From: Haplodiscus bocki
Lineage: Eukaryota
DNA: 64,000 nucleotides
NCBI GenBank assembly: GCA_965655095.1
Contig: OZ296651.1
Span: 57,288,001-57,352,000 of the forward strand
Direction: 5' to 3'
Shown: positions 1 through 23,100 of the stretch, in pieces
Layout of the letters: each line of letters starts with the position of its first letter
Position numbering within the stretch: the first letter of the stretch is position 1
Position numbers and translations under genes: made by a program
Notes under the pieces: model-generated
The model's database searches: none
What the model was told of the DNA's origin: nothing
What the model saw: the letters and a program-made list of their open reading frames with translations, nothing else

Positions 1-367
1 GGTAATAAAGCCTGCATTTCACGTCTTGGAAGTACAATACCATCGGCCATATCATATGGCGATGACCTCTGTAAGTCATCTGCCCCTGCTGAAAACGAAA
101 TTTAGTCAATTTCAAAAACATTATCATTACTCAGGAATATCTTCATATTTGTTCGAATCAATCAGACATCAACCAACACCATTCCTGCAGTAGATTAAAG
201 ATAAAATCATAAAGGTAAAGCATGGACGCTTGTCTTCTAAGTGACTCTTTCTCTCTGACTTCTCCGATATACCATGCATTTTTGCTGGGATCTGTCCTAG
301 CCGATCCCTGGTACAACAAATTTCATTTAGTGATAGATTCTGTTGCCACAGACTGTTGGGGAGGTAC

Positions 368-805
368 TGTCATAACCCTCTTGGAAAGAATCACTTCGGT
401 TCATGATCGATTAACAATTTCACCTTGTGGCTGAATTTCAACCTTTGAAGCAATTTTCGAACTTGAACTTTGGAGTGGAATTCGCATTCCAAATTCAAAG
501 TGCACTCACTCAAAAAATGCTTACAACCACATGAGCTCAAACACTGTTATTTATTCAACACAGGTATCTCTGTGGGCGTCAGGCCAAATATGAGATTGAT
601 CTAAAATACATACCCTTTCAGAATTTATCATCAGAAGTTGTTTGCAATAATTTGTTGGCCGAAAGAAGTATAAAAAATTTTAGGTGCGCTCTGCCTTATT
701 GAAAGTGTTGAGTTGTTCGACCTAGCATCCGTTATGAAACTTCAAGAGCCATCCCCATCAGATATAGAAAGAAATAGAAAAGAGAGGAAAACTAAAAACA
801 CCACA
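368..805 (+). repeat. LTR copy 1 (438 bp, TGT...ACA)
   Basis: Starts TGTCAT just after a G-rich tract and ends ACCACA immediately before the PBS. TATAAAA at 669-675. Confidence 0.8.
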
Positions 806-823
806 TGGTGACAGGAGTGGGAT
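806..823 (+). promoter_or_regulatory. Primer-binding site, tRNA-Leu type (TGGTGACAGGAGTGGGAT); also at 3248, 5710, 8172, 10639, 13106
   Basis: 18 nt starting TGG directly after the LTR-terminal CA. One mismatch to the reverse complement of the metazoan tRNA-Leu(CAG) 3' end (TGGTGTCAGGAGTGGGAT). Confidence 0.8.
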
Positions 824-2543
824 AACCGGACTTTTCGGTGGGTGTCATGACCAAACAAAAACCAATGCTGCGACTATAGCTGAACTGTCAGACTATACGG
901 AAGGTATTGGTGATTTCGTTACACAACTGCACACAGCAACAGAGGAAAAGTTCTTTATGGTCTCAAAGGAAGTTGCTGCGCTGAGTGCAATGCAAGCTGA
1001 AATGTTAGAGACGCAACACGAATTGGAAAATAATAGAAAAACAGTTCGAGGTATTCCACAGTAACTTTCATATTCTAGAGGACTGCACCAGATGCTTTTT
1101 TTCAAACCGACAACTGAATTTTAACTTTGATACAGTAGATTAAGTGTTATCAATCTTTTACTCGGATGTCAAAAGTTACCGCTCAGCCCTATATAATTTT
1201 CGATTAAAAATGATCAATTCAATTGCTTCATTATTGAGAAAACATATACCGATGTCATTAGCCCGAAGGAAGCTTTACTGGCACACTTATCATCAGTTAC
1301 TCGTTAGCAGGCGACAGCAAAGAGCCGCCTCTTAACCATACCGATGACCGACTCGATATCATATTACGATTCTCAGTTATTACAAGACGTTGTTTCGGTA
1401 GACTTTGGAGTCTTGATGAGCTTGTCTATACCAATGGCATCGCGCCAAACAGCTTCCACAGTTTACAAAGCCAAAGTTATCCGGATGCCCCAGCCGGAGC
1501 CAGAACTAGCTCTGGGTGGATAATTGAACAGCCCTATATATAATTATCTGAAGATACTATGGAAAGAGTTGTCTTGTCAGTCACAGCTGGACAATTGCAT
1601 CAGAGCTCGACATCTCGCATATGTCATGATGCGATTCCAACAGAGCTCGGACATAGTTCGTGCGTAGCGACTCTTTAGTTTGAAACATGCATCGACGCTC
1701 TAAGTGTTTGTGAAACTGAGTCGTACTTCCTTCCAGTACAAGAGCCAGCTGAAAAGTTAGGCTATGGGATATAGTTATTCACTTCATCATCAGCTGCTTT
1801 TTCATTTCGAGAAACAAATATAGATTGTAAACTGCTACTGATTTCAAATCATATGATGGGTTTCGTGTTTCTATCGTCACGCTAGGTTGCGGAAAACAAT
1901 TAATTTCACCTAACCTGTTAATGTGAAGCGATTTGAGCATTTGTTCAAATTTACTTGCGATCAAAATCAAGGTTCGATCTCCAGGTCCTCTGATCCATTT
2001 GATAACGGAACTGCCAAAAGTTTCATATATGCCTTTCTTTGATTCAAAATCATCCGCTGGAGTTGAACTCCTGCGGAATGTTGCGGACTCATTGAGTCAT
2101 GCATCAAGTAAACACGACCTGAATCAGATTGTTGATATTGCAAAACCAATTGCTGAACGTGTGTCTTTAATTAAACCTCGTTTCGAAAAAGAACTGAAAT
2201 CTTTAGTAGCTGGGAAATTGTCTCTAGCTGTATCACTTTGCAGTTTCATTGGATCCATGCTGCTCCATCTATTGTTTTTCTACTTATATCATCGTTTCCA
2301 TGCTGTTAGGAGACTAGTGCCTAAATTCCTCTGTTTTGGAGATGCAAACATTGAAGTAAAACCCGTTGTTACAGCTGAAATGGCGGACATTTTCGCACCA
2401 AATGACATGTTTGACCCTAAACGAAAATCAAAATTTTTGTTTTGGGCACTGATATCACGTTCAGTAATAAAGCCTGCATTTCACGTCTTGGAAGTACAAT
2501 ACCATCGGCCATATCATATGCCCCTACTGAAAAAGAAATTTAG
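819..2543 (+). pseudogene. env-like membrane glycoprotein relic, unit 1 (5'-truncated; frameshifts and stops)
   Basis: Stitched frames give GITGLFGGC, a helical/heptad region, a Cys-rich middle, a TM segment LSLAVSLCSFIGSMLLHLLFFYLY (2218-2289), a basic stop-transfer stretch and a tail. It lies just upstream of the PPT/3' LTR. Confidence 0.7.
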
Positions 2544-2799
2544 TCAATTTCAAAAACATTATCAATACTCAGAAATATCTTCATATTTGTTCGAATCAAT
2601 CACAGATCAACCAACACCATGCGTGCAGTAGATTAAAGATAAAATCATAAGGGTAAAGTATAGACTCTTGTCTTCTAAGTGACTCTCTTTCTCTCTGACT
2701 TCCCCAATATCCCATGCATTATTACTGGGATCTGTCCTAGCCGATCCCTTGTACTGCAAATTTCATTTACTGATAGATTCTGTGGCGACAGACTCTTTT

Positions 2800-2809
2800 G
2801 GGGAGGTAA
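2800..2809 (+). promoter_or_regulatory. Polypurine tract preceded by a T-run (TCTTTT GGGGAGGTAR); one before each LTR, e.g. 15125-15134
   Basis: Abuts the TG start of each LTR; more degenerate before LTR copies 1 and 6. Confidence 0.65.
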
Positions 2810-3247
2810 TGTCATGATCCTCTTGGAAAGAATCACTTCGGTTCTTGATCGATTAACAATTTCACCTTGTGGCTGAATTTCAATCATTGAAGCCATTTTC
2901 GAACTTGCACTTTGGAGTGGAATTCGCATTCCAAATTCAAAATGCACTCACTCAAAAAATGCTGACAACCACATGAGCTCAAACACTGTTATATATTCAA
3001 CACAGGTATCTCTGTGGGCGTCAGGCCAAATATGAGATTGATCTAAAATACATACCCTTTCAGAATTTATCATCAGAAGTTGTTTGCAATAAATTGATGG
3101 CCGAAAGAAGTATAATAAATTTTAGGTGCGCTCTGCCTTATTGAAAGTGTTGAGTTGTTCGACGTAGCCTCCGTTATAAAACTTCAAGAGCCATCCCCAT
3201 CAGATATAGATGGAAATAGAAACGAGAGGAAAACTAAAAACACCACA
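2810..3247 (+). repeat. LTR copy 2 (438 bp)
   Basis: TGTCATGA...ACCACA between PPT and PBS. Confidence 0.8.
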
Positions 3248-3260
3248 TGGTGACAGAAAT

Positions 3261-5008
3261 GGGATAACCGGAACTTTCAGTGGGTGTCATGACCAAACAA
3301 AAACCAATGTTGCGACTATAGCTGAACTCTCAGACTATGCGGAAGTTATTGGTGATTTCGTTACACAACTGCACACAGCAACAGAGGAAAAGTTCTTTAT
3401 GGTCTCAAAGGAAGTTGCTGCGCTGAGTGCAATGCAAGCTGAAATGTTAGAGACGCAACAAGAATTGGAAAATAATAGAAAAACAGTTCGAGGTATTCCA
3501 CAGTAACTTTCATATTCTAGAGGACTGCACCAGATGCATTTTTTCAAACCAACAACTGAATTTTAACTTTGATACTGTAGCTTCAGTGTTATCAATCTTT
3601 TACTCGGATGTCAAAAGTTACCGCTCAGCCCTATATAGTTTTCGGTTAAAAATGATCAATTCAATTGCTTCATTATTGAGCAAACATTTACCAGTGTCAT
3701 TAGCCCGAAGGAATCTTTACTGACACTCTTATCATCAGTTGCTTGTGAGCAGGCGACAGCAAAGAACCGCCTCTTAACCATACCGATGACCGACTCGATA
3801 TCATATTACGATTCTCAGTTATTACAAGACGTTGTTTCGTCAGACTTGAGAGTCTTGATGACCTTGTCTGTACCAGTGGCATCGCGCCAAACAGCTTTCA
3901 CAGTTTACAAAGCCAAAGTTATCCGGATGCCCCAGCCCGAGCCAGAACTAGCTCTGGGTGGATAATTGAACAGCCCTATATATAATTATCTGAAGATACT
4001 ATGGAATGAGTTGTCTTGTCACAGTCACAGCTGGACAATTGCATCAGAGCTCGAGATCTTGCATATGTCATGATGCGATTCCATCAGAGCTCGGACATAG
4101 TTCATGCGTAGCGACTCTTTAGTTTGAAACATGCTTCGACGCTCTAAGTGTTTGTGAAACTGAGTCGTTCTTCCTTCCAGTACAAGAGCCAGCTGAAAAG
4201 TTAGGCTATGGAATATGGTTATTCACTTCATCATCAGCTGCTTTTTCATTTCGAGAAACAAATATAGACTGTAAACTGCTACTGATTTCAAATCATATGA
4301 TGGGTTTCGTATTTCTATCGTCACGCTAGGTTGCGGAAAACAATTAATTTCACCTAACCTGTAAATGGGAAGCGATTTGAGCGTTTGTTCAAAACTACTT
4401 GCGATCAAAATCAAGGTTCGATCACCAGGTCCTCTGATCCATTTGATAACGGAACTGCCAAAAGTTTCATATATGCCTTTGTTTGATTCAAAATCATCCG
4501 CTGGAGTTGAACTCCTGCGGAATGTTGCGGAATCATTGAGTCATGCATCAAATAAACACGACCTGAGTCAGAATGTTGATATTGCAAAACCAATTGCTGA
4601 ATGTGTGTCTTTAATTAAACCTCGTTTCGAAAAAACTGAATTTTTTAGTACCTGAGAAATTGTCTCTAGCTATTACACTTTTCAGTTTCCTTCGATCCAT
4701 GCTGCTCCATCTGTTGTTTTTCTACTTATATAATCGTTTCCATGCTCTTAGGAGACCAGTGCCTAAATTCCTCGGTATTGGAGACGCAAACATTGAAATA
4801 AAACCCGTTGTTACAGCTGAAACGCCGGACGTTTTCGCAGCAAATGACATGTTTGACCCTAAACGAAAATCAAAATTTTGTTTTCGGCACTGATATCACG
4901 TTCAGTAATAAAGCCTGCATTTCAAGTCTCGGAAGTACAATACCATCGGCCATATCATATGGCGATGACTTCTGTAAGTCATCTGCCCCTACTGAAAACG
5001 AAATTTAG
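3261..5008 (+). pseudogene. env-like relic, unit 2
   Basis: Same stitched protein; fragments in ORFs 3210-3506, 4365-4655, 4660-4893, 4808-5008. Confidence 0.7.
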
Positions 5009-5274
5009 TCAATTTCAAAAACATTATCAATACTCAGAAATATCTTTATTTTTGTTCGAATCAATCACACATCAACCAACACCATTCGTGCAGTAGATTA
5101 AAGATAAAATCATAAAGGTAAAGCATAGACTCTTGTCTTCTAAGTGGCTCTCTTTCTCTCTGACTTCCCCAATATCCCATGCATTATTACTGGGATCTGT
5201 CCTAGCCGATCCCTTGTACAGCAAATTTCATTTACTGATAGATTCTGTGACGACAGACTCTTTTGGGGAGGTAG

Positions 5275-5709
5275 TGTCATGACCCTCTTGGAAAGAATCA
5301 CTTCGGTGCATGATCGATTAACAATTTCACCTTGTGGCTGAGTTTCAACCTTTTGAGCAATTTTGGAACTTGAAATTTGGAGTGGAATTCGCATTCCAAA
5401 TTCAAAATGCACTCACTCAAAAAACGATGACAACCACATGAGCTCAAACACTGTTATATATTCAACACAGGTATCTCTGTGGGCGTCAGGCCGAATATGA
5501 GATTGATCTAAAATACATACCCTTTCAGAATTTATCATCAGAAGTTGTTTGCAATAAATTGATGGCCGAAAGAAGTATAAATTTTAGGTGCGCTCTGCCT
5601 TATTGAAAGTGTTGAGTTGTTCGACGTAGCATCCGTTATGAAACTTCAAGAGCCATCCCCATAAGATATAGAAAGAAATAGAAAAGAGAGGAAAACTAAA
5701 AACACCACA
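5275..5709 (+). repeat. LTR copy 3 (435 bp, 3-bp deletion near the TATA)
   Basis: TGTCATGA...ACCACA. Confidence 0.8.
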
Positions 5710-5722
5710 TGGTGACAGGAGT

Positions 5723-7470
5723 GGGATAACCGGAATTTTCGGTGGGTGTCATGACCAAACAAAAACCAATGCTGCGACTATAGCTGAACTCTCAGACTAT
5801 ACGGAAGGTATTGGTGATTTTGTTACACAACTGCACACAGCAACAGAGGAAAAGTTCTTTATGGTCTCAAAGGAAGTTGCTGCGCTGAGTGCAATGCAAG
5901 CTGAAATGTTAGAGACGCAACAAGAAGTGGAAAATAATAGAAAAACAGTTCGAGGTATTCCACAGTAACTTTCATATTCTAGGGAACTGCACCAGATGCA
6001 TTTTTTCAAACCAACAACTGAATTTTAACTTTGATACTGTAGCTTCAGTGTTATCAATCTTTTACTCGGATGTCACAAGTTACCGCTCAGCCCTGTATAG
6101 TTTTCGATTAAAAATGATCAATTCAATTGCTTCATTATTGAGAAATCATTTACCAGTGTCATTAGCCCGAAGGAATCTTTACTGACACTCTTATCATCAG
6201 TTGCTCGTGAGCGGACGACAGCAAGGAACCGCCTCTTAACCATACCGATGACCGACTTGATATCATATTACGATTCTCAGTTATTACAAGACGTTGTTTC
6301 GGTAGACTTGGGAGTCTTGATGACCTTGTCTGTATCAGTGGCATCGCGCCAAACAGCTTTCACAGTTTACAAAGCCAAAGTTATCCGGATGCCCCAGCCC
6401 GAGCCAGAACTAGCTCTGGGTGGATAATTGAACAGCCCTATATATAATTATCTGAAGATACTATGGAATGAGTTGTCTTGTCACAGTCACAGCTGGACAA
6501 TTGCATCAGAGCTCCAGATCTTGCATATGTCATGATGCGATTCCATCAGAGCTCGGACATAGTTCATGCGTAGCGACTCTTTAGTTTGAAACATGCTTCG
6601 ACGCTCTAAGTGTTTGTGAAACTGAGTCGTTCTTCCTTCCAGTACAAGAGCCAGCTGAAAAGTTAGGCTATGGAATATGGTTATTCACTTCATCATCAGC
6701 TGCTTTTTCATTTCGAGAAACAAATATAGACTGTAAACTGCTACTGATTTCAAATCATATGATGGGTTTCGTATTTCTATCGTCACGCTAGGTTGCGGAA
6801 AACAATTAATTTCACCTAACCTGTAAATGGGAAGCGATTTGAGCGTTTGTTCAAAACTACTTGCGATCAAAATCAAGGTTCGATCACCAGGTCCTCTGAT
6901 CCATTTGATAACGGAACTGCCAAAAGTTTCATATATGCCTTTCTTTGATTCAAAATCATCCGCTGGAGTTGAACTCCTGCGGAATGTTGCGGAATCATTG
7001 AGTCATGCATCAAATAAACACGACCTGAGTCAGAATGTTGATATTGCAAAACCAATTGCTGAATGTGTGTCTTTAATTAAACCTCGTTTCGAAAAAACTG
7101 AATTTTTTAGTACCTGAGAAATTGTCTCTAGCTATTACACTTTTCAGTTTCCTTCGATCCATGCTGCTCCATCTGTTGTTTTTCTACTTATATAATCGTT
7201 TCCATGCTCTTAGGAGACCAGTGCCTAAATTCCTCGGTATTGGAGACGCAAACATTGAAATAAAACCCGTTGTTACAGCTGAAACGCCGGACGTTTTCGC
7301 AGCAAATGACATGTTTGACCCTAAACGAAAATCAAAATTTTGTTTTCGGCACTGATATCACGTTCAGTAATAAAGCCTGCATTTCAAGTCTCGGAAGTAC
7401 AATACCATCGGCCATATCATATGGCGATGACTTCTGTAAGTCATCTGCCCCTACTGAAAACGAAATTTAG
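5723..7470 (+). pseudogene. env-like relic, unit 3
   Basis: Near-identical to unit 2, with the same fragment ORFs. Confidence 0.7.
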
Positions 7471-7736
7471 TCAATTTCAAAAACAATATCAATACTCAGA
7501 AATATCTTTATTTTTGTTCGAATCAATCACACATCAACCAACACCATTCGTGCAGTAGATTAAAGATAAAATCATAAAGGTAAAGCATAGACTCTTGTCT
7601 TCTAAGTGGCTCTCTTTCTCTCTGACTTCCCCAATATCCCAGGCATTAATACTGGGATCTGTCCTAGGCAATCCCTTGTACAATAACTTTCATTTACCTA
7701 TAGATTCTGTGGCGACAGACTCTTTTGGGGAGGTAG

Positions 7737-8171
7737 TGTCATGACCCTCTTGGAAAGAATCACTTCGGTGCATGATCGATTAACAATTTCACCTTGTGGC
7801 TGAGTTTCAACCTTTTAAGCAATTTTGGAAATTGAAATTTGGAGTGGAATTCGCATTCCAAATTCAAAATGCACTCACTCAAAAAACGATGACAACCACA
7901 TGAGCTCAAACACTGTTATATATTCAACACAGGTATCTCTGTGGGCGTCAGGCAGAATGTGAGATTGATCTAAAATACATACCCTTTCAGAATTTATCAT
8001 CAGAAGTTGTTTGCAATAAATTGATGGCCGAAAGAAGTATAAATTTTAGGTGCGCTCTGCCTTATTGAAAGTGTTGAGTTGTTCGACGTAGCATCCGTTA
8101 TGAAACTTCAAGAGCCATCCCCATAAGATATAGAAAGAAATAGAAAAGAGAGGAAAACTAAAAACACCACA
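7737..8171 (+). repeat. LTR copy 4 (435 bp)
   Basis: TGTCATGA...ACCACA. Confidence 0.8.
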
Positions 8172-8184
8172 TGGTGACAGGAGT

Positions 8185-9934
8185 GGGATAACCGGAATTT
8201 TCGGTGGGTGTCATGACCAAACAAAAACCAATGCTGCGACTATAGCTGAACTCTCAGACTATACGGAAGGTATTGGTGATTTTGTTACACAACTGCACAC
8301 AGCAACAGAGGAAAAGTTCTTTATGGTCTCAAAGGAAGTTGCTGCGCTGAGTGCAATGCCAGCTGAAATGTTAGAGACGCAACAAGAAGTGGAAAATAAT
8401 AGAAAAACAGTTCGAGGTATTCCACAGTAACTTTCATATTCTAGGGGACTGCACCAGATGCATTTTTTCAAACCAACAACTGAATTTTAACTTTGATACT
8501 GTAGCTTCAGTGTTATCAATCTTTTACTCGGATGTCACAAGTTACCGCTCAGCCCTGTATAGTTTTCGATTAAAAATGATCAATTCAATTGCTTCATTAT
8601 TGAGAAATCATTTACCAGTGTCATTAGCCCGAAGGAATCTTTACTGACACTCTTATCATCAGTTGCTCGTGAGCGGACGACAGCAAGGAACCGCCTCTTA
8701 ACCATACCGATGACCGACTTAATATCATATTACGATTCTCAGATATTACAAGACGTTGTTTCGATAGACTTGGGAGTCTTGATGACCTTGTCTATACCAA
8801 TGGCATCGCGCCAAACAGCTTTCACAGTTTACAAAGCCAAAGTTATCCGGATGCCCCAGCCCGAGCCAGAACTAGCTCTGGGTGGATAATTGAACAGCCC
8901 TATATACAATTATCTGAAGATACTAAGGAAAGAGCTGTCTTGTCACAGTCACAGCTGGACAATTGCATCAGAGCTCGAGATCTCGCATATGTCATGATGC
9001 GATTCCAACAGAGCTCGGACATAGTTCATGCGTAGCGACTCGTTAGTTTGAAACATGCATCGACGCTCTAAATGTTTGTGAAACTGAGTCGTTCTTCCTT
9101 CCAGTACAAGAGCCAGCTGAAAAGTTAGGATATGGAATATGGTTATTCACTTAATCATCAGCTGCTTTTTCATTTCGAGAAACAAATAAAGATTCTAAAC
9201 TGCTACTGATTTCAAACCATTTGATGGGTTTCATATTTCTATCGTCACGCTACTTTGCGGAAAACAATTAGTTTCACCTAACCTGTAAATGTGAAGCGAT
9301 TTGAGCATTTGTTCAAAACTACTTGCGATCAAAAACAAGGTTCGATCTTCAGGTCTTCTGATCCATTTGATAACGGAACTGCCAAAAGTTTCGGATATGC
9401 CTTTCTTTGATTCAAAGTCATCCGCTGGAGTTGAACTCCTCTGGAATGTTGCGGAATCATTGAGGCATGCATCAAATAAACACGACCTGAGTCAGAATGT
9501 TGATATTGCAAAACCAATTGCTGAACGTGTGTCTTTAATTAAACATCGTTTCGAAAAAGAACTGAAATTTTTAGTACCATGGAAATTGTCTCTAGCTATA
9601 TCACTTTTCAGTTTCCTTGGATCCATGCTGCTCCATCTGTTGTTTTTCTACTTATATAATCGTTTCCATGCTGTTGGGAGACCAGTGCCTAAGTTCCTCC
9701 GTATTGGAGATGCAAACATTGAAATAAAACCCGTTGTTACAGCTGAAATGCCGGACATTTTCGCAGCAAATGACATGTTTGACCCTAAACGAAAATCAAA
9801 ATTTTGTTTTCGGCACTGATATCACGTTCAGTGATAAAGCCTGCCTTTCACGTCTTGGAAGTACAATACCATCGGCCATATCATATGGCGATGACTTCTG
9901 TAAGTCATCTGCCCCTGCTGAAAACGAAATTTAG
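8185..9934 (+). pseudogene. env-like relic, unit 4
   Basis: 172-aa TM-containing fragment 9301-9819 plus disrupted upstream frames. Confidence 0.7.
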
Positions 9935-10200
9935 TCAATTTCAAAAACATTATCAATACTCAGAAATATCTTCATATTTGTTCGAATCAATCGCACATCA
10001 ACCAACACCATTCGTGCAGTAGGTTAAAGATAAAATCATAAAGGTAAAGCATAGGCTCTTGTCTTCTAAGTGGCTCTCTTTCTCTCTGACTTCCCCAATA
10101 TCCCAGGCATTAATACTGGCATCTGTCCTAGCCAATCCCTTGTACAATAACTTTCATTTACCTATAGATTCTGTGGCGACAGACTCTTTTGGGGAGGTAG

Positions 10201-10638
10201 TGTCATGACCCTCTTGGAAATAATCACTTCGGTGCATGACCGATTAACAGTTCCACCTTGTGGCTGAGTTTCAACCTTTTAAGCAATTTTGGAACTTGAA
10301 ATTTGGAGTGGAATTCGCATTCCAAATTCAAAACGCCGTCACTCAAAAAATGTTGACAACCACATGGGCTCAACCAGTGTTATTTATTGAACACAGGTGT
10401 CTCTGTGGGCGTCATGCCAAATATGAGATTGATCTAAAATACATACCCTTTCAGAATTTATCATCAGAAGTTGTTTGCAATAATTTGATGGCCGAAAGAA
10501 TTATAATAAATTGTAGGTGCGGTCTGCCTTATTGAAGGTGTTGAGTTGTTCGACCTAGCATCCGTTTTGAAACTTCAAGAGCCGTCCCCATAAGATATAG
10601 AAAGAAATAGGAAAGAGAGGAAAACTAAAAACACCACA
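10201..10638 (+). repeat. LTR copy 5 (438 bp)
   Basis: TGTCATGA...ACCACA. Confidence 0.8.
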
Positions 10639-10651
10639 TGGTGACAGGAAT

Positions 10652-12401
10652 GGGATAACTGGAATTTTGGGTGGGTGTCATGACCAAACCAAAACCAATG
10701 CTGCGACTATAGCTGAACTCTCAGACTATGCGGAAGGTATTGGTGATTTCGTTACACAACTGCACACAGCAACAGAGGAAAAGTTCTTTATAGTCTCAAA
10801 GGAAGTTGCTGCGCTGAGTGCAATGCAAGCTGAAATGTTAGAGACGCAACACGAATTGGAAAATAATAGAAAAACAGTTCGAGGTATTCCACAGTAACTT
10901 TCATATTCTAGAGGACTGCACCAGATGCATTTTTTCAAACCAACAACTGAATTTCAACTTTGATACTGTAGCTTCAGTGTTGTCAATCTTTTACTCGGAT
11001 GTCACAAGTTACCGCTCAGCCCTATATAGTTTTCGATTAAAAATGATCAATTCAATTGCTTCATTATTGAGAAAACATTTACCAGTGTCATTAGCCCGAA
11101 GGAATCTTTACTGACACTCTTATCATCAGTTGCTCGTGAGCAGACGACAGCAAGGAACCTCCTCTTAACCATACCGATGACCGACTTGATATCGTATTAC
11201 GATTCTCAGTTATTACAAGACGTTGTTTCGGTAGACTTGGGAGTCTTGATGACGTTGTCTATACCAATGGCATCGCGCCAAACAGCTTTCACAGTTTACA
11301 AAGCCAAAGTTATCCGGATGCCCCAGCCCGAGTCAGAACTAGCTCTGGGTGGATAATTGAACAGCCCTATAAATAATTATCTGAAGATACTTTGGAAAGA
11401 GCTCTCTTGTCACAGTCACAGCTAGACAATTGCATCAGAGCTCGAGATCTCGCATATGTCTTGATGCGATTCCAAGAGAGCTCGGACATAGTTCATGCGT
11501 AGCGACTCTTTAGTTTGAAACATGCATCGACGCTCTAAGTGTTTGTGAAACTGAGTCGTTCTTCCTTCCAGTACAAGAGCCAGCTGAAAAGTTAGGCTAT
11601 GGAATATGGTTATTCACTTCATCATCAGCTGCTTTTTCATTTCGAGAAACAAATATAGATTCTAAACTGCTACTGATTTCAAATCATATGATGGGTTTCG
11701 TATTTCTATCGTCACGCTAGATTGCGGAAAACAATTAATTTCACCTAACCTGTAAATATGAAGCGATTTGAGCATTTGTTCAAAACTACTTGCGATCAAA
11801 AACAAGGTTCGATCTTCAGGTCTTCTGATCCATTTGATAACGGAACTGCCAAAAGTTTCGGATATGCCTTTCTTTGATTCAAAGTCATCCGCTGGAGTTG
11901 AACTCCTGTGGAATGTTGCGGAATCATTGAGGCATGCATCAAATAAACACGACCTGAGTCAGAATGTTGATATTGCAAAACCATTTGCTGAACGTGTGTC
12001 TTTAATTAAACATCGTTTCGAAAAAGAACTGAAATTTTTAGTACCATGGAAATTGTCTCTAGCTATATCACTTTTCAGTTTCCTTGGATCCATGCTGCTC
12101 CATCTGTTGTTTTTCTACTTATATAATCGTTTCCATGCTGTTGGGAGACCAGTGCCTAAGTTCCTCCGTATTGGAGATGCAAACATTGAAATAAAACCCG
12201 TTGTTACAGCTGAAATGCCGGACATCTTCGCAGCAAATGACATGTTTGACCCTAAACGAAAATCAAAATTTTGTTTTCGGCACTGATATCACGTTCAGTG
12301 ATAAAGCCTGCCTTTCACGTCTTGGAAGTACAATACCATCGGCCATATCATATGGCGATGACTTCTGTAAGTCATCTGCCCCTGCTGAAAACGAAATTTA
12401 G
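10652..12401 (+). pseudogene. env-like relic, unit 5
   Basis: Fragments 10667-10897, 11768-12286, 12201-12401. Confidence 0.7.
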
Positions 12402-12667
12402 TCAATTTCAAAAACATTATCAATACTCAGAAATATCTTCATATTTGTTCGAATCAATCGCACATCAACCAACACCATTCGTGCAGTAGGTTAAAGATAA
12501 AATCATAAAGGTAAAGCATAGGCTCTTGTCTTCTAAGTGGCTCTCTTTCTCTCTGACTTCCCCAATATCCCAGGCATTAATACTGGCATCTGTCCTAGCC
12601 AATCCCTTGTACAATAACTTTCATTTACCTATAGATTCTGTGGCGACAGACGCTTTTGGTGAGGTAG

Positions 12668-13105
12668 TGTCATGACCCTCTTGGGAATAATCACTTCGGT
12701 GCATGACCGATTAACAGTTCCACCTTGTGGCTGAGTTTCAACCTTTTAAGCAATTTTGGAACTTGAAATTTGGAGTGGAATTCGCATTCCAAATTCAAAA
12801 CGCCGTCACTCAAAAAATGCTGACAACCACATGGGCTCAACCAGTGTTTTTTATTGAACACAGGTATCTCTGTGGGCGTCATGCCAAATATGAGATTGAT
12901 CTAAAATACATACCCTTTCAGAATTTATCATCAGAAGTTGTTTGCAATAATTTGATGGCCGAAAGAATTATAATAAATTTTAGGTGCGCTCTGCCTTATT
13001 GAAGGTGTTGAGTTGTTCGACCTAGCATCCGTTTTGAAACTTCAAGAGCCGTCCCCATAAGATATAGAAAGAAATAGGAAAGAGAGGAAAACTAAAAACA
13101 CCACA
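12668..13105 (+). repeat. LTR copy 6 (438 bp)
   Basis: TGTCATGA...ACCACA. Confidence 0.8.
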
Positions 13106-13118
13106 TGGTGACAGGAAT

Positions 13119-14868
13119 GGGATAACTGGAATTTTGGGTGGGTGTCATGACCAAACCAAAACCAATGCTGCGACTATAGCTGAACTCTCAGACTATGCGG
13201 AAGGTATTGGTGATTTCGTTACACAACTGCACACAGCAACAGAGGAAAAGTTCTTTATAGTCTCAAAGGAAGTTGCTGCGCTGAGTGCAATGCAAGCTGA
13301 AATGTTAGAGACGCAACACGAATTGGAAAATAATAGAAAAACAGTTCGAGGTATTCCACAGTAACTTTCATATTCTAGAGGACTGCACCAGATGCATTTT
13401 TTCAAACCAACAACTGAATTTCAACTTTGATACTGTAGCTTCAGTGTTGTCAATCTTTTACTCGGATGTCACAAGTTACCGCTCAGCCCTATATAGTTTT
13501 CGATTAAAAATGATCAATTCAATTGCTTCATTATTGAGAAAACATTTACCAGTGTCATTAGCCCGAAGGAATCTTTACTGACACTCTTATCATCAGTTGC
13601 TCGTGAGCAGACGACAGCAAAGAACCGCCTCTTAACCATACCGATGACCGACTTGATATCATATTACGATTCTCAGTTATTACAAGACGTTGTTTCGGTA
13701 GACTTGGGAGTCTTGATGACGTTGTCTATACCAATGGCATCGCGCCAAACAGCTTTCACAGTTTACAAAGCCAAAGTTATCCGGATGCCCCAGCCCGAGT
13801 CAGAACTAGCTCTGGGTGGATAATTGAACAGCCCTATAAATAGTTATCTGAAGATACTATGGAAAGAGCTCTCTTGTCACAGTCACAGCTAGACAATTGC
13901 ACCAGAGCTCGAGATCTCGCATATGTCCTGATGCGATTCCAAGAGAGCTCGGACATAGTTCATGCGTAGCGACTCTTTAGTTTGAAACATGCATCGACGC
14001 TCTAAGTGTTTGTGAAACTGAGTCGTTCTTCCTTCCAGTACAAGAGCCAGCTGAAAAGTTAGGCTATGGAATATGGTTATTCACTTCATCATCAGCTGCT
14101 TTTTCATTTCGAGAAACAAATATAGATTCTAAACTGCTACTGATTTCAAATCATATGATGGGTTTCGTATTTCTATCGTCACGCTAGATTGCGGAAAACA
14201 ATTAATTTCACCTAACCTGTAAATCTGAAACGATTTGAGCATTTGTTCGAAACCACTTGCAATCAAAATCAGGGTTCGATCACCAGGTGCTCTGATCCAT
14301 TTGATAACGGAACTGCCAAAAGATTCAAATATGCCTTTCTTTGATTCAAAATCATCCGCTGGAGTTGAACTCCTGTGGAATGTTGCGGAATCATTGAGGC
14401 ATGCATCAAATAAACACGACCTGAGTCAGAATGTTGATATTGCAAAACCATTTGCTGAACGTGTGTCTTTAATTAAACATCGTTTCGAAAAAGAACTGAA
14501 ATTTTTAGTACCATTGAAATTGTCTCTAGCTATATCACTTTTCAGTTTCCTTGGATCCATGCTGCTCCATCTGTTGTTTTTCTACTTATATAATCGTTTC
14601 CATGCTGTTGGGAGACCAGTGCCTAAGTTCCTCCGTATTGGAGATGCAAACATTGAAATAAAACCCGTTGTTACAGCTGAAATGCCGGACATCTTCGCAG
14701 CAAATGACATGTTTGACCCTAAACGAAAATCAAAATTTTGTTTTCGGCACTGATATCACGTTCAGTGATAAAGCCTGCCTTTCACGTCTTGGAAGTACAA
14801 TACCATCGGCCATATCATATGGCGATGACTTCTGTAAGTCATCTGCCCCTGCTGAAAACGAAATTTAG
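13119..14868 (+). pseudogene. env-like relic, unit 6
   Basis: Fragments 13134-13364, 14235-14753, 14668-14868. Confidence 0.7.
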
Positions 14869-15134
14869 TCAATTTCAAAAACATTATCAATACTCAGAAA
14901 TATCTTCATATTTGTTCGAATCAATCGCACATCAACCAACACCATTCGTGCAGTAGGTTAAAGATAAAATCATAAAGGTAAAGCATAGGCTCTTGTCTTC
15001 TAAGTGGCTCTCTTTCTCTCTGACTTCCCCAATATCCCAGGCATTAATACTGGCATCTGTCCTAGCCAATCCCTTGTACAATAACTTTCATTTACCTATA
15101 GATTCTGTGGCGACAGACTCTTTTGGGGAGGTAG

Positions 15135-15569
15135 TGTCATGACCCTCTTGGAAATAATCACTTCGGTGCATGATCGATTAACAATTTCACCTTGTGGCTG
15201 AGTTTCAACCTTTTGAGCAATTTTGGAACTTGAAATTTGGAGTGGAATTCGCATTCCAAATTCAAAATGCACTCACTCAAAAAACGATGACAACCACATG
15301 AGCTCAAACACTGTTATATATTCAACACAGGTATCTCTGTGGGCGTCAGGCAGAATGTGAGATTGATCTAAAATACATACCCTTTCAGAATTTATCATCA
15401 GAAGTTGTTTGCAATAAATTGATGGCCGAAAGAAGTATAAATTTTAGGTGCGCTCTGCCTTATTGAAAGTGTTGAGTTGTTCGACCTAGCATCCGTTTTG
15501 AAACTTCAAGAGCCGTCCCCATAAGAGATAGAAAGAAATAGAAAAGAGAGGAAAACGAAAAACACCACG
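15135..15569 (+). repeat. Terminal (3') LTR copy 7 (435 bp; ends CCACG rather than CCACA)
   Basis: Homology to the unit stops exactly at the LTR end and no PBS follows, which independently marks the LTR boundary. Confidence 0.8.
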
Positions 15570-15962
15570 AAAAAAACTAACAGAAGTTCTTCTACCGGAA
15601 ACTTTCGAATTTGGAAAAATCTACCTAGTCAATCTCTCACTCTGGTTGATTCAGATTTCATGCAATTAGGACGACTGGATGTCGTACTCTTCAGTTCTGA
15701 TGTTTACGAAACAGTTGTCTTAGATGGCAAACTAAACAACAACCTTCACTGCAGAAACGCCAGTTTCGGATATGTATTATCAGGAACCGCCAAACACACG
15801 CCATCAATAGTCACATCGGTCAAACTCCTGCCAACAAACTTTGACTTAAAACCCTTTTAGATGCTCCAGGACTTTCCAACGCTACACAAATTCATGAGTT
15901 AAGTCAAAAGCATTTCACAGAGACAACCAGACGGCCATCCAACGGCAAGTTCGTGGCCTCCC
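15570..15962 (+). mobile_element. BEL/Pao LTR retrotransposon pol fragment (region at/after the DUF1758-type protease), decayed
   Basis: LTLVDSDFMQLGRLDVVLFSSDVYETVVLDGK...RNASFGYVLSG...FDLKPF*...QKHFTETTRRPSNGKFV resembles the BEL/Pao pattern LADPxF..PG.ID.LLG.D...T.FGW.LSG...FWE...HF..T..R..GR..V. Confidence 0.7.
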
Positions 15963-16859
15963 AAAAAAATCAGTAGCTGAAAGTGTCGGAACAAGTGACA
16001 CACGTGTGTTAAAGTCTGGGTGTTAGTTACCGCTGTGTGGTATTTCCTATGGTATAGTAGAATAACGATTCAAACTTAACATTAGAGATCCATCAAACAG
16101 TTGAAGATCTGCTGTTTTCTACATTACGTGAACATTGGGAACGCTCCGGTTATGAGAACTTTGACAGCTTTTCCAACATTCATGGGAAAGCAACAATACT
16201 AGAAAATCCTCAAGGCATTTTCCTCATTCTTATAGCACTAAGCTTTTGAGCTGTGCTTGGCTCATGTTTTAACAACCATTGATATCGAAAAGCTTCTACA
16301 TTTTAGTATAGGAGTTCTAGAATTTTAACGGAAAACATATGCGTATTCAAAAAAAACTTTCTGAATTTTTTCAAATGTCAACAGATTTCGAGACTTCTCT
16401 GACTACCATCTACGACACGTTTCGTCTATTGGGAAAGAAATATTTCGGAAGTTTCAATTTTGACTCGAGTCCGAAGTACTGAAATATTTTTTTTTCAAGT
16501 GAGCAGCTCTGCTATGTTTAGGCAAGAAAAATCTACATCAGTTTCAGTGGTCTCAAAAAGTACCTGATTTTTGTTGAGTTTGAAGTTTTTGAGTTTTTTA
16601 ACTAAGGTATATACCAATTGAAAACAAAAACTGCAACGATTAAATCGAAAGTTTTGAAATCGTAATTTGATCGTTAGAAGTCCGCCGCTGCCGCCTCCTC
16701 CAGCAACTTTCTCTGGGTCGAGCTCTAGTAGTCTGCTGTGCAGGTAATCGTAATTGGACAGCGCTCTCCCAATTCAAACCAAAAAGCTGTTTTGCCAGTT
16801 GTCGGCTCTGGTATGGAACGAAAGAAGACGACCGACCAAGCTGGTTTAAGGGCGGAGAG

Positions 16860-19742: not shown

Positions 19743-20116
19743 GTGATAAATTCTCTGAGAACGGATCATCAAACTTCTACAGTCTATCTTGTCCAGTTTG
19801 CAACGACACAGTGAGCGCTAAAATGGATGAAGAGAATGTTTTGAGCCAATTACCAACCAACAAATTGCTGCAAAATATAGTTGACCGGTACCGCGCGGCT
19901 TTGGAACAAGTGGGTGTTAATGGTGACTCAAATTCACTGAACGAAGCCAAGGTGCAGGACGACGTGAAACTTCCTGATTGCGACATGTGCGAAGACGAAG
20001 AAGAGGGTCCTCAGGTTGCCACCAAGTGGTGTTCTGATTGTACGGTTCTGTATTGCGACAAGTGCTTTGCTCAGTGTCATAGAATGAAGGGACCTTTTGC
20101 TACTCATACTATAAAG
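19743..20116 (+). CDS. TRIM exon: last RING CxxC (CPVC) + B-box 1
   Basis: acag| ...LSCPVC...LPTNKLLQNIVDRY...CDMC...CSDC...YCDKCFAQCH...FATH |gtaaat. Confidence 0.9.
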
Positions 20117-23100
20117 GTAAATAATCTTCACACCGAAGTTCCTTGAGGATATCACAAACTGTCGGACTCCAGTCATACCATTGGATTCGGGAGACAAGGG
20201 CGTCGTTCAGAACAATTTTTGTCAAAATCAAGCAATTAGTTAGAGGCCTATTCATTTGACTTCTTTCGAGACATTAGGCTTGGCTTAATGCCAATAGATT
20301 TTGTGTTGAAGGTTTGGAGTGGAGAAAAGTTCATTTTGTTTTTTTTTAGATGTCAAAGGCTATTTTTGCGTCCTGTCTTTACAGTAAGCTCGGAATTCTT
20401 AATGTTTTTGCACTAATCAATGGAAGATCTTTCGGTTTAGCGGTGTGATGTGATAGTTTTTGTCACAAAAGAACGTGAATTTATGTTTTTATCGATACAG
20501 ATTTGTGATATACCACTTGCCCAGTGCGTTTGTTAACTTGGACCCCGATTCCAAACGCATTCGCAGGATACGGTTGCTTGTTGCTTAGTTGCAGTGGTAA
20601 GGTTGCAATTGACCGGGCCCAAAGTTGTCAGCAGCCGCAAATTTTTCGTCGGCGAGTTTGCGCTGAAAACATTTAAAACCGAGGTTTTTTAACAGTGCAA
20701 GTGGTACGCTAACGGTGACTGGTTTTTGCTAACTTTTCAGATGGCAAATTGCTCGTTTCCAGCTCCATTTCATTTAAAAATAGTAAATTTATCGTACATC
20801 TCTACTGTTATCTCTCCATTATTTGTTCTCTACCTAGTCTCGCCGGATTTTGCCACGAGCTCTCTGCCATTGCATAAACATGTAGTCCTTGATGTAAATA
20901 ACTGGTCGAGTACCTTCGCCAGCCTTGCCCTAAGCACCTTAGCGCCCATGTTTACGCGAGTGGAGTCAAGCCTATTCCCAGGAAGACACGTCAAAATGAT
21001 TTCGTTTTTCTGTCCGTGACATCCCTCTGCGTTTCATCTCTTTACTTGTAAATTTCTCGGCACCTATCGGTCTGACTTATCCGATTTTTGTTTAAGCACT
21101 ACGACGGGTTCACTATTTATCATATTCCCAACTTTCGGACGCCGAATTTTCGGGCGAGTTAATAGTGACAAAAATTTCATTTTCCGGATTTTTTTAGCGG
21201 GCAAAGGGTATATTATTGACTCCTGTCTTGACAGGAAGCTTGGAAATGCTAGTTATTACTTTAATCGATGGATCACTTTTCAGTTTAGCGGCGTGCATTG
21301 ATAATTCTGGAGAACGTTTCTGGGCTTTTTCAGTCAAGAAAACGCGAAACTTTTTGAATTTTTTCCAAACAGATTTGACTTTCCCCATTGCCCACTTCGT
21401 TTCCTAACTTTGACGCTCATTTTCCACAAACGCATTTGTAGGATCCGTTTGCTTTTTGCTTAGCTACACTGGCAACGTCGTAATTGACCGGGGCAAAAAA
21501 GCAGAAATTTTCTAAATTTGAAAAAATTACCAAATTTGATGCAGTATTTTTTGAGAAAAAAACTTTTCATCCTCTTAAAAGGCATGTTAAACAAAATTGG
21601 AGGGAGAAAAATATGCTGGTGGTAGCCGTCTGTTCTTGTATGTAGATTCATTTAAATGGACGTGTTGGGTATTTTATGGAAGCCGGAGTTGTTCGTCTTT
21701 ATTGGTGCACCCAGTTTTTTTCCCAGACATTTACAGCGTCTAATTGTAAAATGTTTGTGAAGTTGCAATGTAGCAAGTAAAAGGTAGATTCAGTGGACTG
21801 TCTTTAATAAGTCGATTGTTTCTATCATTGCACGATTCGTTACGGCATTATAACCTTTATATAGTTTCAAGGAAGGTGGCTGATTCTAACGGTTGTTACA
21901 ATTTAAACCTTGAAAGTTATTGTTTTGCTTTCCTGAATTTTTTCTTTTACACTCCCAATTAATTTTCCGGCTATGAATCTGCACTAATAGGACACAAAAA
22001 TGCAAATTTTTGTAATTTAGTCGTTTTTTCGAAAAAATAAGGTTGTTTAAAAAGGTTTTGAAGTGAGAGTGTCATAAGTGGAGCGAAGTTTCTGTAGACC
22101 TCAACACTGGTAATTTCAGAGTCAATTTATCTGATTTTCCACTTGCAAGCAGATGGTTTTTCGTTGAAAGGTCAATAGATCTTTACCTATATTGTAAGTT
22201 TTTTTGACTGCCAGATGAATATTTGTGTACTTTCCAAAGGTTCTGTAGAAAAGCTTGCAAAAATCTTTTATTGTTTGCTTTGAAAAACAAAGAGATTTTT
22301 TTGAGGTTAGAAGGTTGTAAACCGAAAATTAGTAAGGAGGTTTCGTCGGGCAGTTTTCTGTTTAAGGAATGCAGAAATTTGGTTTGTCAATTCTCGAGAC
22401 ACATTTCTGAAAATCCATTTTTTCGATCTATTTCTTGCCAGAAGTTTTGTTGTCAGTGAATGGTGTTTTGAAAAACACGTTAATGGGCCCTATATTTTTC
22501 CATAGGACTACTATCCTAAGTGCAGATCTTAATAAATGCTTTTTAAAGCCGAAATGGTTTTTTGGTCCAGAGAATTTCGAAATCTGGCGACAAAAATTGA
22601 AAATCGCCTTTTTTCGCCTGTTAAACGCCGTTCATGGTAAGGCTTGATTGATGAGGTACGTTAATCGTTAGTTATGCCTCGTATAGGATGGAGATGAAAT
22701 TCGGGATCGTTTTCTCAGTTTTTTGTTTTTCATAAAGTGAAATGTTTTTCTTTTTTTGCCAAAAATTCATCTAGAATGCATTGTTTTTGACATATGTACG
22801 AGTTTTCGCGTGGCGCAGTCCTCATCTGTGAAGCTTCACATGCTCATCGTGATCCTAGGACAAAGGACTTCGAATCCATGTTTTATATTTTTTGTTGTGT
22901 CACCGTCATAACGAACGTAATTCAACGTCTGCGTTTTCAAACTTTGACGCCCGCATTAATCGGGCTTTTTTGTCCCATTTTCGGCCCTTTACATAGTTAG
23001 ATCGAGTAGGTTGTGAATGAGCTTATCTCCAATGTTGAGCTGCCAAAAAATTTTCGCTATCAAAAAATCAACGAAAATATTCAAAAAGTACAGCCTTTTT

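What the first reader, a model, noticed from the sequence alone, without database searches (positions are those of the whole stretch)
1..15569. Tandem array of an env-only LTR retroelement with shared LTRs
Seen: the ~2.46-kb repeat parses as LTR-PBS-(env relic)-PPT-LTR repeated at least 6.3 times, with neighbouring units sharing one LTR. The array stops precisely at an LTR end. All cis signals for reverse transcription are kept while gag and pol are absent. Known: shared-LTR tandem arrays are described for miniature non-autonomous elements (Cassandra and tandem-array terminal-repeat retrotransposons in miniature), whose interiors are normally non-coding. Inference: this is a defective passenger derivative of an env-bearing invertebrate Gypsy-like element, amplified by LTR-LTR unequal exchange or re-integration of 1-LTR circles into a macrosatellite.
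Basis: partly seen in the sequence, partly recalled or inferred. Interest (0 to 1): 0.88.

Follow-up and report, generated by a model that had tools for sequence, protein, structure and literature searches.

The report
Tandem array of env-only LTR retroelement
A dead, envelope-gene-only remnant of a virus-like LTR retroelement has been copied head to tail eight times, with neighbouring copies sharing one LTR; it is a clean example of a known way that mobile elements turn into tandem repeats, not a new kind of system.

Summary
Window 1-15569 is the right-hand three quarters of a 20.1-kb array. The same contig, fetched through one of the window's own ORFs, shows it starts 4.56 kb left of the window. 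The array has 9 LTR-like modules (435-438 bp, TGT...ACA) and 8 interiors (2004-2029 bp), and both outer edges fall on LTR termini. In five of eight interiors, the first 18 nt match 18/18 the 3' end plus CCA of a tRNA-Leu(UAA) gene from a metagenome contig, and the match stops at exactly 18. Homology to a family of 713-788-aa proteins starts inside that primer-binding site and runs about 1.75 kb. A model of one relative matches baculovirus F, chu-like virus glycoproteins and paramyxovirus F. The first ~165 residues of env, and all of gag and pol, are absent. Each copy carries 5-7 frameshifts and 4-6 stops, and most are shared, so env was dead before amplification. A purine run precedes each LTR. 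No target-site duplication and no dispersed copies were found. The lineage (Gypsy or BEL/Pao) is untestable because there is no pol. The best mechanism is one insertion expanded by LTR-LTR unequal exchange. New member of a known kind; modest interest.

The parts
1..15569 (+). Part of the shared-LTR tandem array that lies in the window (whole array: window -4559 to 15569, 9 LTRs and 8 interiors)
1..93 (+). Tail of the env relic of interior 2 (the rest lies left of the window)
358..367 (+). PPT-like purine run directly 5' of LTR 3
368..805 (+). LTR 3 (438 bp, TGT...ACA)
806..823 (+). PBS of interior 3, 18/18 to tRNA-Leu(UAA) 3' end plus CCA
810..2530 (+). env relic of interior 3 (N-terminally truncated F-type envelope gene, broken by frameshifts and stops)
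2800..2809 (+). PPT-like purine run 5' of LTR 4
2810..3247 (+). LTR 4 (438 bp)
3248..3265 (+). PBS of interior 4, 16/18
3252..4996 (+). env relic of interior 4 (broken)
5265..5274 (+). PPT-like purine run 5' of LTR 5
5275..5709 (+). LTR 5 (435 bp)
5710..5727 (+). PBS of interior 5, 18/18
5714..7458 (+). env relic of interior 5 (broken)
7727..7736 (+). PPT-like purine run 5' of LTR 6
7737..8171 (+). LTR 6 (435 bp)
8172..8189 (+). PBS of interior 6, 18/18
8176..9922 (+). env relic of interior 6 (broken)
10191..10200 (+). PPT-like purine run 5' of LTR 7
10201..10638 (+). LTR 7 (438 bp)
10639..10656 (+). PBS of interior 7, 17/18
10643..12389 (+). env relic of interior 7 (broken)
12658..12667 (+). 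PPT-like purine run 5' of LTR 8
12668..13105 (+). LTR 8 (438 bp)
13106..13123 (+). PBS of interior 8, 17/18
13110..14856 (+). env relic of interior 8 (broken)
15125..15134 (+). PPT-like purine run 5' of LTR 9
15135..15569 (+). LTR 9, the terminal LTR (435 bp); its last base differs from all internal copies
15570..15970 (+). Right flank: decayed fragment read by eye as the C-terminal part of a retroelement protease region. With the left flank (L001 about 600-1073, zinc knuckle and protease-like motif) it looks like an older LTR element into which the array is nested.
   Evidence: only a weak Pfam zinc-knuckle match; searches found nothing

Best explanation
This is a shared-LTR tandem array of a non-autonomous deletion derivative of an envelope-bearing LTR retroelement. 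Each unit reads LTR (about 437 bp), then an 18-nt primer-binding site for tRNA-Leu(UAA). The PBS is fused directly to an F-type envelope gene that lacks its first ~165 codons. About 280 nt of 3' non-coding sequence and a purine run follow, then the next LTR. gag, pol, the leader and the start of env are missing.

Most likely history:
1. (Inferred) A deleted cDNA arose during reverse transcription. The deletion starts at exactly the 18th nucleotide of the PBS, which is where plus-strand strong-stop DNA ends. The simplest origin is a plus-strand transfer that landed inside env instead of on the PBS complement.
2. (Flanks shown; nature of the host element inferred) One such copy sat in the gag-protease region of an older, already decaying retroelement.
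3. (Shown by shared lesions) Its env accumulated frameshifts and stops.
4. (Architecture shown; mechanism inferred) Unequal homologous exchange between the 5' and 3' LTRs, and later between whole units, expanded LTR-interior-LTR into 9 LTRs and 8 interiors.

Today it is an inert macrosatellite-like relic about 4 kb upstream of a TRIM-like host gene.
For: - Array and period.
- Left edge at the LTR start and right edge at the LTR end, so n+1 LTRs for n interiors.
- PBS. The 15 nt after TGG, reverse-complemented, are exactly the last 15 nt of two tRNA-Leu(taa) genes in metagenome locus L040. With CCA added, the match is 18/18 in five interiors, 17/18 in two and 16/18 in one. Complementarity stops at 18.
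- Purine run directly 5' of every internal LTR.
- env. 104 protein hits to the C-terminal piece and a family of more than 158 proteins, full length 713-788 aa. Every interior aligns collinearly on the + strand to residues about 164-169 through 690-710. hhalign of the first piece against the family profile gives probability 99.1%.
- Fold. A model of relative P0133 (pLDDT 71) hits chu-like virus glycoproteins and baculovirus F/Ld130 at E 1e-21 to 1e-14. It hits paramyxovirus and pneumovirus F in the PDB at E 3e-6 and weaker.
- Decay. There are 5-7 frameshifts and 4-6 stops per interior. With three different guide proteins, 3-4 frameshift classes and 2 stop classes are shared by all eight interiors.
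- Neighbour-similarity gradient.
- Literature. LTR recombination is the common route to shared-LTR tandems (PMC5932611). Aberrant plus-strand transfer gives deletions anchored at the PBS (PMC12657518).
Against: - No target-site duplication is visible at the array edges. The outermost base of the first LTR and of the last LTR each differ from all internal copies.
- The tRNA that matches the PBS comes from an unidentified organism, not shown to be the host.
- No full-length parent, solo LTR or dispersed copy with this LTR was seen. The window has none, and 90%-identity protein clusters hold only this locus.
- The lineage cannot be assigned without pol.
- The plus-strand-transfer origin of the deletion rests only on the position of the junction.
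- The retroelement nature of the flanks rests on motifs read by eye and one sub-threshold Pfam match.
Confidence: 0.8

Rival explanations
1. The array arose as a concatemer. Either a 1-LTR circle was copied by rolling-circle replication, or a read-through multimer transcript was reverse-transcribed. The concatemer was then inserted as a block.
For: This route is proposed for some tandem TEs (Fig. 1B of PMC5932611; discussion in PMC7215508). The missing target-site duplication would fit a non-integrase insertion.
Against: Both array edges fall on LTR termini, which a randomly opened concatemer would not give. Units were not identical at one time point: divergence is graded along the array, and LTR groups are non-positional, which suggests several rounds of exchange.
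Confidence: 0.1
2. This is a plain segmental tandem duplication of the 3' part of a provirus (env from codon ~165 to the provirus end). On this reading the 437-bp module is not behaving as an LTR.
For: The unit junction coincides with the array's right end. Any tandem duplication would show that.
Against: The array starts with the 437-bp module, not with env. There is one more module than interiors. The 18 nt after each internal module are a perfect tRNA-Leu PBS of canonical length. No N-terminal env coding is detectable in the module.
Confidence: 0.03
3. The copy number is an assembly artefact.
For: Long tandem repeats are error-prone in assemblies. The 27-kb contig is identical to the window, so it is not independent.
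Against: Units differ by 1-7% with unit-specific substitutions and indels. A second contig, which also carries the neighbouring host gene, encodes a junction ORF two residues different.
Confidence: 0.04
4. The array is kept by the host for a function, for example as a source of small RNAs against related enveloped retroelements, or as an env-derived protein.
For: Solo or captured viral glycoproteins are discussed as possible defence material in mosquitoes (PMC7642597). The array lies about 4 kb upstream of a TRIM-like gene.
Against: No copy has an open env. The longest ORF is 232 aa and differs between units. Lesions accumulate freely. No RNA family was found. There are no expression data.
Confidence: 0.05

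Closest known systems
Shared-LTR tandem LTR retrotransposons formed by recombination between LTRs (Drosophila survey, PMC5932611 Fig. 1A)
   Same: One LTR lies between neighbouring interiors, there are n+1 LTRs for n interiors, and expansion by unequal exchange is expected.
   Different: Here the interior is only a truncated env. There are eight interiors at one site, and the host is an unidentified invertebrate.
Cassandra and tandem-array TRIM elements of plants (PMC7215508)
   Same: Non-autonomous elements with PBS and PPT arranged as LTR-interior-LTR-interior arrays; 13 LTRs with 12 interiors have been reported.
   Different: Those interiors are short and non-coding, and Cassandra LTRs carry 5S-derived sequence. 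Here the interior is 2.0 kb of env relic, Rfam finds no 5S, and the host is an animal.
Envelope-bearing LTR retroelements of invertebrates: Ty3/gypsy errantiviruses with F-type env (PMC13524379), and Pao-family elements with a captured chuvirus-like glycoprotein ('Anakin', PMC7642597)
   Same: The env belongs to the same fold class. A tRNA-Leu PBS is reported for several insect errantivirus clades (PMC13524379).
   Different: gag and pol are absent here, so the lineage cannot be assigned. env lacks its signal peptide, F2 part and cleavage site.
Defective proviruses with deletions anchored at the PBS through aberrant plus-strand transfer (HIV-1 reservoir study, PMC12657518)
   Same: The LTR and PBS are intact, followed directly by a far-downstream part of the genome.
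   Different: There is no tRNA read-through insert. The junction sits at exactly PBS nucleotide 18. This is a germ-line copy in an invertebrate, and the mechanism is inferred from position only.

Membership tests
LTR retrotransposon (structural definition) | Direct long terminal repeats with TG...CA ends bounding the interior | tested here: met
   Nine modules of 435-438 bp with TGT...ACA ends, 90-99% identical, one on each side of every interior. The outermost base at each array edge is changed.
LTR retrotransposon (structural definition) | PBS complementary to a tRNA 3' end directly after the 5' LTR | tested here: met
   18/18 to tRNA-Leu(taa) plus CCA from locus L040 in five of eight interiors, with the match ending at 18. 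The host's own tRNA was not available.
LTR retrotransposon (structural definition) | Polypurine tract directly before the 3' LTR | tested here: met
   A purine run ends 3 nt before every internal LTR start. This is met in form only.
LTR retrotransposon (structural definition) | Target-site duplication of 4-6 bp at the two outer edges | tested here: not met
   The left and right flanks share no short direct repeat in any register tried.
Ty3/gypsy errantivirus (Metaviridae) | pol with PR-RT-RNaseH-IN order and RT grouping with Ty3/gypsy | not testable with these tools
   There is no pol in the element. Relatives' loci were not fetched (see referred steps).
BEL/Pao (Belpaoviridae) | pol with Pao-type protease and RT | not testable with these tools
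   There is no pol in the element. The flanking gag-protease-like fragment belongs to a different, older element and gave no Pfam family.
F-type class I viral fusion glycoprotein (baculovirus F / paramyxovirus F-like) | Fold similarity of the ectodomain | tested here: met
   Tested through the family, not the relic itself. The model of relative P0133 matches baculovirus F/Ld130 and chu-like virus glycoproteins at E 1e-21 to 1e-14, and solved paramyxovirus F at E 3e-6. The relic aligns to that relative over residues 164-697.
F-type class I viral fusion glycoprotein (baculovirus F / paramyxovirus F-like) | Basic cleavage site followed by a fusion peptide | tested here: not met
   Relatives have two invariant arginines and invariant glycines there. 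The relic starts downstream of them, at about residue 164-169.
F-type class I viral fusion glycoprotein (baculovirus F / paramyxovirus F-like) | Pfam Baculo_F (PF12259) above the gathering score | tested here: inconclusive
   The window pieces give none. Relative P0010 scores 22.8 bits against a cut-off of 24.1. One of 29 aligned relatives matches at E 0.003. Two relatives carry a precomputed PF12259 hit.
TRIM / Cassandra-type tandem arrays | Miniature element with a short non-coding interior; Cassandra LTRs carry 5S-derived sequence | tested here: not met
   The interior is about 2.03 kb and derived from env. Rfam finds no 5S or other family.

The most novel reading that the evidence does not exclude
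The array may not be inert. It could be transcribed and feed small RNAs, or an env-derived product, that act against related active enveloped retroelements of the same host. It would then be a locally amplified 'memory' of an envelope gene next to a TRIM-like gene.
Probability: 0.07. Interest if true: 0.6.

Novelty: new member of a known kind. Interest (0 to 1): 0.33.

Why it matters
The locus shows, in an animal and at base-pair resolution, how an LTR element becomes a tandem repeat. One insertion of a dead, env-only derivative grew to eight units with shared LTRs.

It also preserves a junction (LTR, exactly 18 nt of PBS, then mid-env) that reads like a fossil of a mis-landed plus-strand transfer during reverse transcription. 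Such events are mostly known from studies of human retroviruses.

It adds an F-type envelope family from a poorly sampled invertebrate to the growing list of envelope-bearing retroelements. It does not reveal a new mechanism or a functional gene.

Tried and rejected
- Pfam on seven ORF pieces of the unit found nothing at E<=1. A PDB sequence search with two pieces gave only noise.
- I tested whether the '437-bp LTR' is really the missing N-terminal part of env, which would make the unit a whole env gene with no LTR. tblastn with the relatives' N-termini gave only weak matches. hhalign of the LTR ORF against the family profile gave nothing. An HMM of the N-terminal part found nothing in the 875 bp outside the env homology. 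Rejected.
- I tested a plain segmental duplication. It is rejected by the left boundary.
- I tested whether the right flank is a diverged continuation of the interior. No similarity above shuffles.
- I searched for a target-site duplication in several registers. None found.
- Identity of the flanks: Pfam gave only a sub-threshold zinc knuckle. A protein search with the right flank found nothing. No pol remnants lie in 16-19.8 kb.
- There is no tRNA gene in the window and no Rfam family.
- Paper searches for the PBS string and for the ENA accession were useless. The errantivirus survey's PBS table is not held.
- An exact look-up of the ALG12-like ORF found nothing.
- The 11-nt repeat shared by the LTR start and a site in env is near chance: 20 of 500 shuffles reach it.
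Full report
**1. Observation**

A direct-repeat search and blastn of one unit against the window show a head-to-tail repeat. Start-to-start spacing is 2442-2467 bp, from window base 1 to 15568/15569. The window holds six full units and two partial ones, 91-98% identical. No further copy lies in 16-64 kb, and the window has no N. TRF reported nothing there only because its longest period is 500. Neighbouring units are the most alike, and informative sites group adjacent units.

**2. Full extent**

ORFs 4365-4655 and 6827-7117 of the window are exactly proteins P0001 and P0122 of the public collection. I looked up the first of these, one of the window's own ORFs. The look-up returned locus L001 from a 27,172-bp ENA contig. 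L001 is identical to the window at 14655 of 14655 overlapping bases, so it is the same locus and not a comparator.

L001 shows the array begins 4559 bp left of the window. The whole array is about 20.1 kb, with nine modules of 435-438 bp and eight interiors of 2004-2029 bp.

- The left edge of the array is the same point at which, inside the array, a purine run gives way to TGT.
- The right edge is the point at which, inside the array...ACA gives way to TGG.

There is therefore one more module than there are interiors, and both outer edges are module termini. That is the signature of LTR-interior-LTR-...-LTR. It rules out a plain segmental duplication, which would give a whole number of identical units.

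**3. The primer-binding site is real**

I took the 15 nt that follow TGG from the window, reverse-complemented them and scanned the metagenome collection. About 120 matches came back, as chance predicts. In locus L040, however, both matches are exactly the last 15 nt of two tRNA-Leu(taa) genes.

Adding CCA gives an 18-nt PBS. It is matched 18/18 in five interiors, 17/18 in two and 16/18 in one. In the perfect copies the complementarity stops at exactly 18. That is the canonical length copied from the primer tRNA.

The organism of L040 is unknown, so a match to the host's own tRNA remains to be shown. A survey of envelope-bearing Ty3/gypsy elements reports tRNA-Leu PBSs in several insect clades (PMC13524379).

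**4. The interior is an envelope relic**

Pfam and PDB sequence searches with the window's ORF pieces found nothing.

- A full scan of 1.84 billion representatives with the 172-aa C-terminal piece gave 104 hits. Full-length relatives are 713-783 aa.
- A second search from relative P0133 gave more than 158 relatives, many in multi-copy clusters. All are unnamed.
- Every interior aligns collinearly on the + strand to residues about 164-169 through about 690-710 of these proteins. With the closest guide, the alignment runs to 8 residues before that guide's end.
- hhalign of the first piece against a 29-sequence family profile (A2) gives probability 99.1%.
- A model of P0133 built on that alignment (pLDDT 71.4) matches glycoproteins of chu-related and other arthropod negative-strand viruses, and baculovirus F/Ld130 proteins, at E 1e-21 to 1e-14. 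It matches solved paramyxovirus and pneumovirus F proteins at E 3e-6 and weaker.
- Pfam Baculo_F is only borderline in a few relatives.

The interior is therefore derived from an F-type class I fusion glycoprotein gene. The relic keeps the long helical region, the beta-rich core and a C-terminal hydrophobic stretch (the last read directly from the ORF translations).

**5. What is missing and broken**

The first ~165 residues of env are absent. In relatives this part holds the signal peptide, the small subunit, two invariant arginines and the start of the fusion peptide. No trace of it is detectable in the remaining 875 bp of the unit. No gag or pol is present, and there is no leader. env homology begins 5 to 14 nt inside the 18-nt PBS, depending on the guide protein.

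A frameshift-aware alignment with three guide proteins, printing counts only, gave these results:

- Each interior carries 5-7 frameshifts and 4-6 in-frame stops.
- All eight interiors share 3-4 frameshift classes and 2 stop classes.
- Seven interiors share a further 2 frameshift classes and 1 stop class.
- The rest are private or shared by two or three neighbours.

env was therefore already dead before most of the amplification. I counted the breaks in the flanking older element only by eye and give no number for them.

**6. Surroundings**

The 1 kb left of the array (L001 about 600-1073) reads as a Cys-His zinc knuckle followed by an aspartic-protease-like motif. The 400 bp right of it (window 15570-15970) reads as the downstream part of such a protease region. 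Both are on the + strand.

Support is weak. Pfam gives only a sub-threshold zinc-knuckle match at E 0.014. It gives nothing for the right flank, and a protein search with the right flank found nothing. My reading is that the array is nested in an older, decayed LTR element. No pol remnants follow.

No target-site duplication is visible. The first base of the first LTR and the last base of the last LTR each differ from all internal copies. I cannot explain this.

To the right lie host exons of a TRIM-like gene (B-box, FN3, SPRY) and an intronless ALG12-like gene. The best named ALG12 homologues are bivalves and other invertebrates at only 41-47% identity. The host is therefore an invertebrate with no close annotated relative.

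**7. Copies elsewhere**

At 90% identity, the protein clusters of the unit's ORFs hold only members from the 27-kb contig, with one exception. A 98-aa junction ORF differing by two residues (P0257) lies on an 82,246-bp contig. An ALG12 protein with the same start as the window's, but a different end, also lies on an 82,246-bp contig.

The simplest reading is the same locus in another haplotype or assembly, not a dispersed copy. I did not fetch that contig, nor the contigs of the intact env relatives (see referred steps). There is thus no evidence that the env-only form ever spread, and no parent element has been identified.

**8. Mechanism**

- **Shown:** the architecture, the PBS, the purine run, the truncated and broken env, the shared lesions and the similarity gradient.
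- **Inferred, expansion:** recombination between LTRs is the established route to shared-LTR tandems (PMC5932611). Arrays of 13 LTRs and 12 interiors are known for Cassandra (PMC7215508). The non-positional LTR groups point to several rounds of exchange or conversion. LTRs 5, 6 and 9 are 97.9-99.1% alike, and LTRs 7 and 8 are 98.6% alike, whereas LTR 1 and LTR 9 are 95.4% alike.
- **Inferred, the deletion:** plus-strand strong-stop DNA ends at the 18th PBS nucleotide. Deletions anchored at the PBS through aberrant plus-strand transfer are documented (PMC12657518). The junction here sits at that nucleotide, with up to 5 nt shared between the PBS end and the env reading frame. This rests on position alone. 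I give it about 0.35-0.4.

**9. Comparison and novelty**

The array works like the shared-LTR tandems of Drosophila elements and like plant Cassandra or TA-TRIM arrays. It is not a TRIM or a Cassandra, because the interior is long and env-derived and there is no 5S. It cannot be filed under Ty3/gypsy or BEL/Pao because pol is absent. I rate it a new member of a known kind, of modest interest.

Noticed in passing
window 19811-20146, 32341-32742, 53543-53968 (+): Exon-like ORFs with B-box, fibronectin type III and SPRY domains. Together they look like a TRIM9-like host gene whose first coding exon lies about 4.2 kb downstream of the array.
   Followed up: partly
window 56383-57894 (+): Intronless 503-aa ALG12-like mannosyltransferase ORF. 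The best named homologues are only 41-47% identical (bivalves, amphioxus, echinoderms, Daphnia), so the host has no close annotated relative. A variant with the same start but a different C-terminal end lies on an 82,246-bp contig.
   Followed up: partly
L001 about 600-1073 and window 15570-15970: The two flanks of the array read as consecutive parts (zinc knuckle, protease-like motif, downstream protease region) of one older decayed retroelement in the same orientation. Only a sub-threshold Pfam zinc-knuckle match supports this.
   Followed up: partly
L001 1077 and window 15569: The outermost base of the first LTR and of the last LTR each differ from all seven or eight internal copies, and there is no target-site duplication. 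Unexplained.
   Followed up: partly
window 5273-5283 and 5746-5756 (same in other units): An 11-nt exact repeat is shared by the PPT/LTR-start boundary and a site in env 38 nt after the LTR end. 20 of 500 shuffles reach the score, so it is probably chance.
   Followed up: yes
array, LTRs 1-9: LTR relatedness does not follow position. The terminal LTR 9 is closest to LTRs 5 and 6 (97.9%), LTRs 7 and 8 form their own pair (98.6%), and LTR 1 is closest to LTR 5 (97.0%). This suggests repeated exchange or conversion.
   Followed up: partly
alignment A2, profile positions 155-250: The family profile shows weak but systematic sequence similarity to the N-terminus of influenza haemagglutinin HA2 (E 0.05-0.7). 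This fits a class I fusion subunit but is not significant on its own.
   Followed up: no
L040 4458-5744 and 12836-13148: A metagenome contig of unknown origin carries a dense tRNA gene cluster (Thr, Asn, Arg, Leu, Lys, Ile, Leu...). Two tRNA-Leu(taa) copies match the element's PBS, and a third copy has a different acceptor end.
   Followed up: partly
window 38575-38658 and other short arrays: Small tandem repeats of 16-25 bp period lie scattered in the host-gene part of the window.
   Followed up: no
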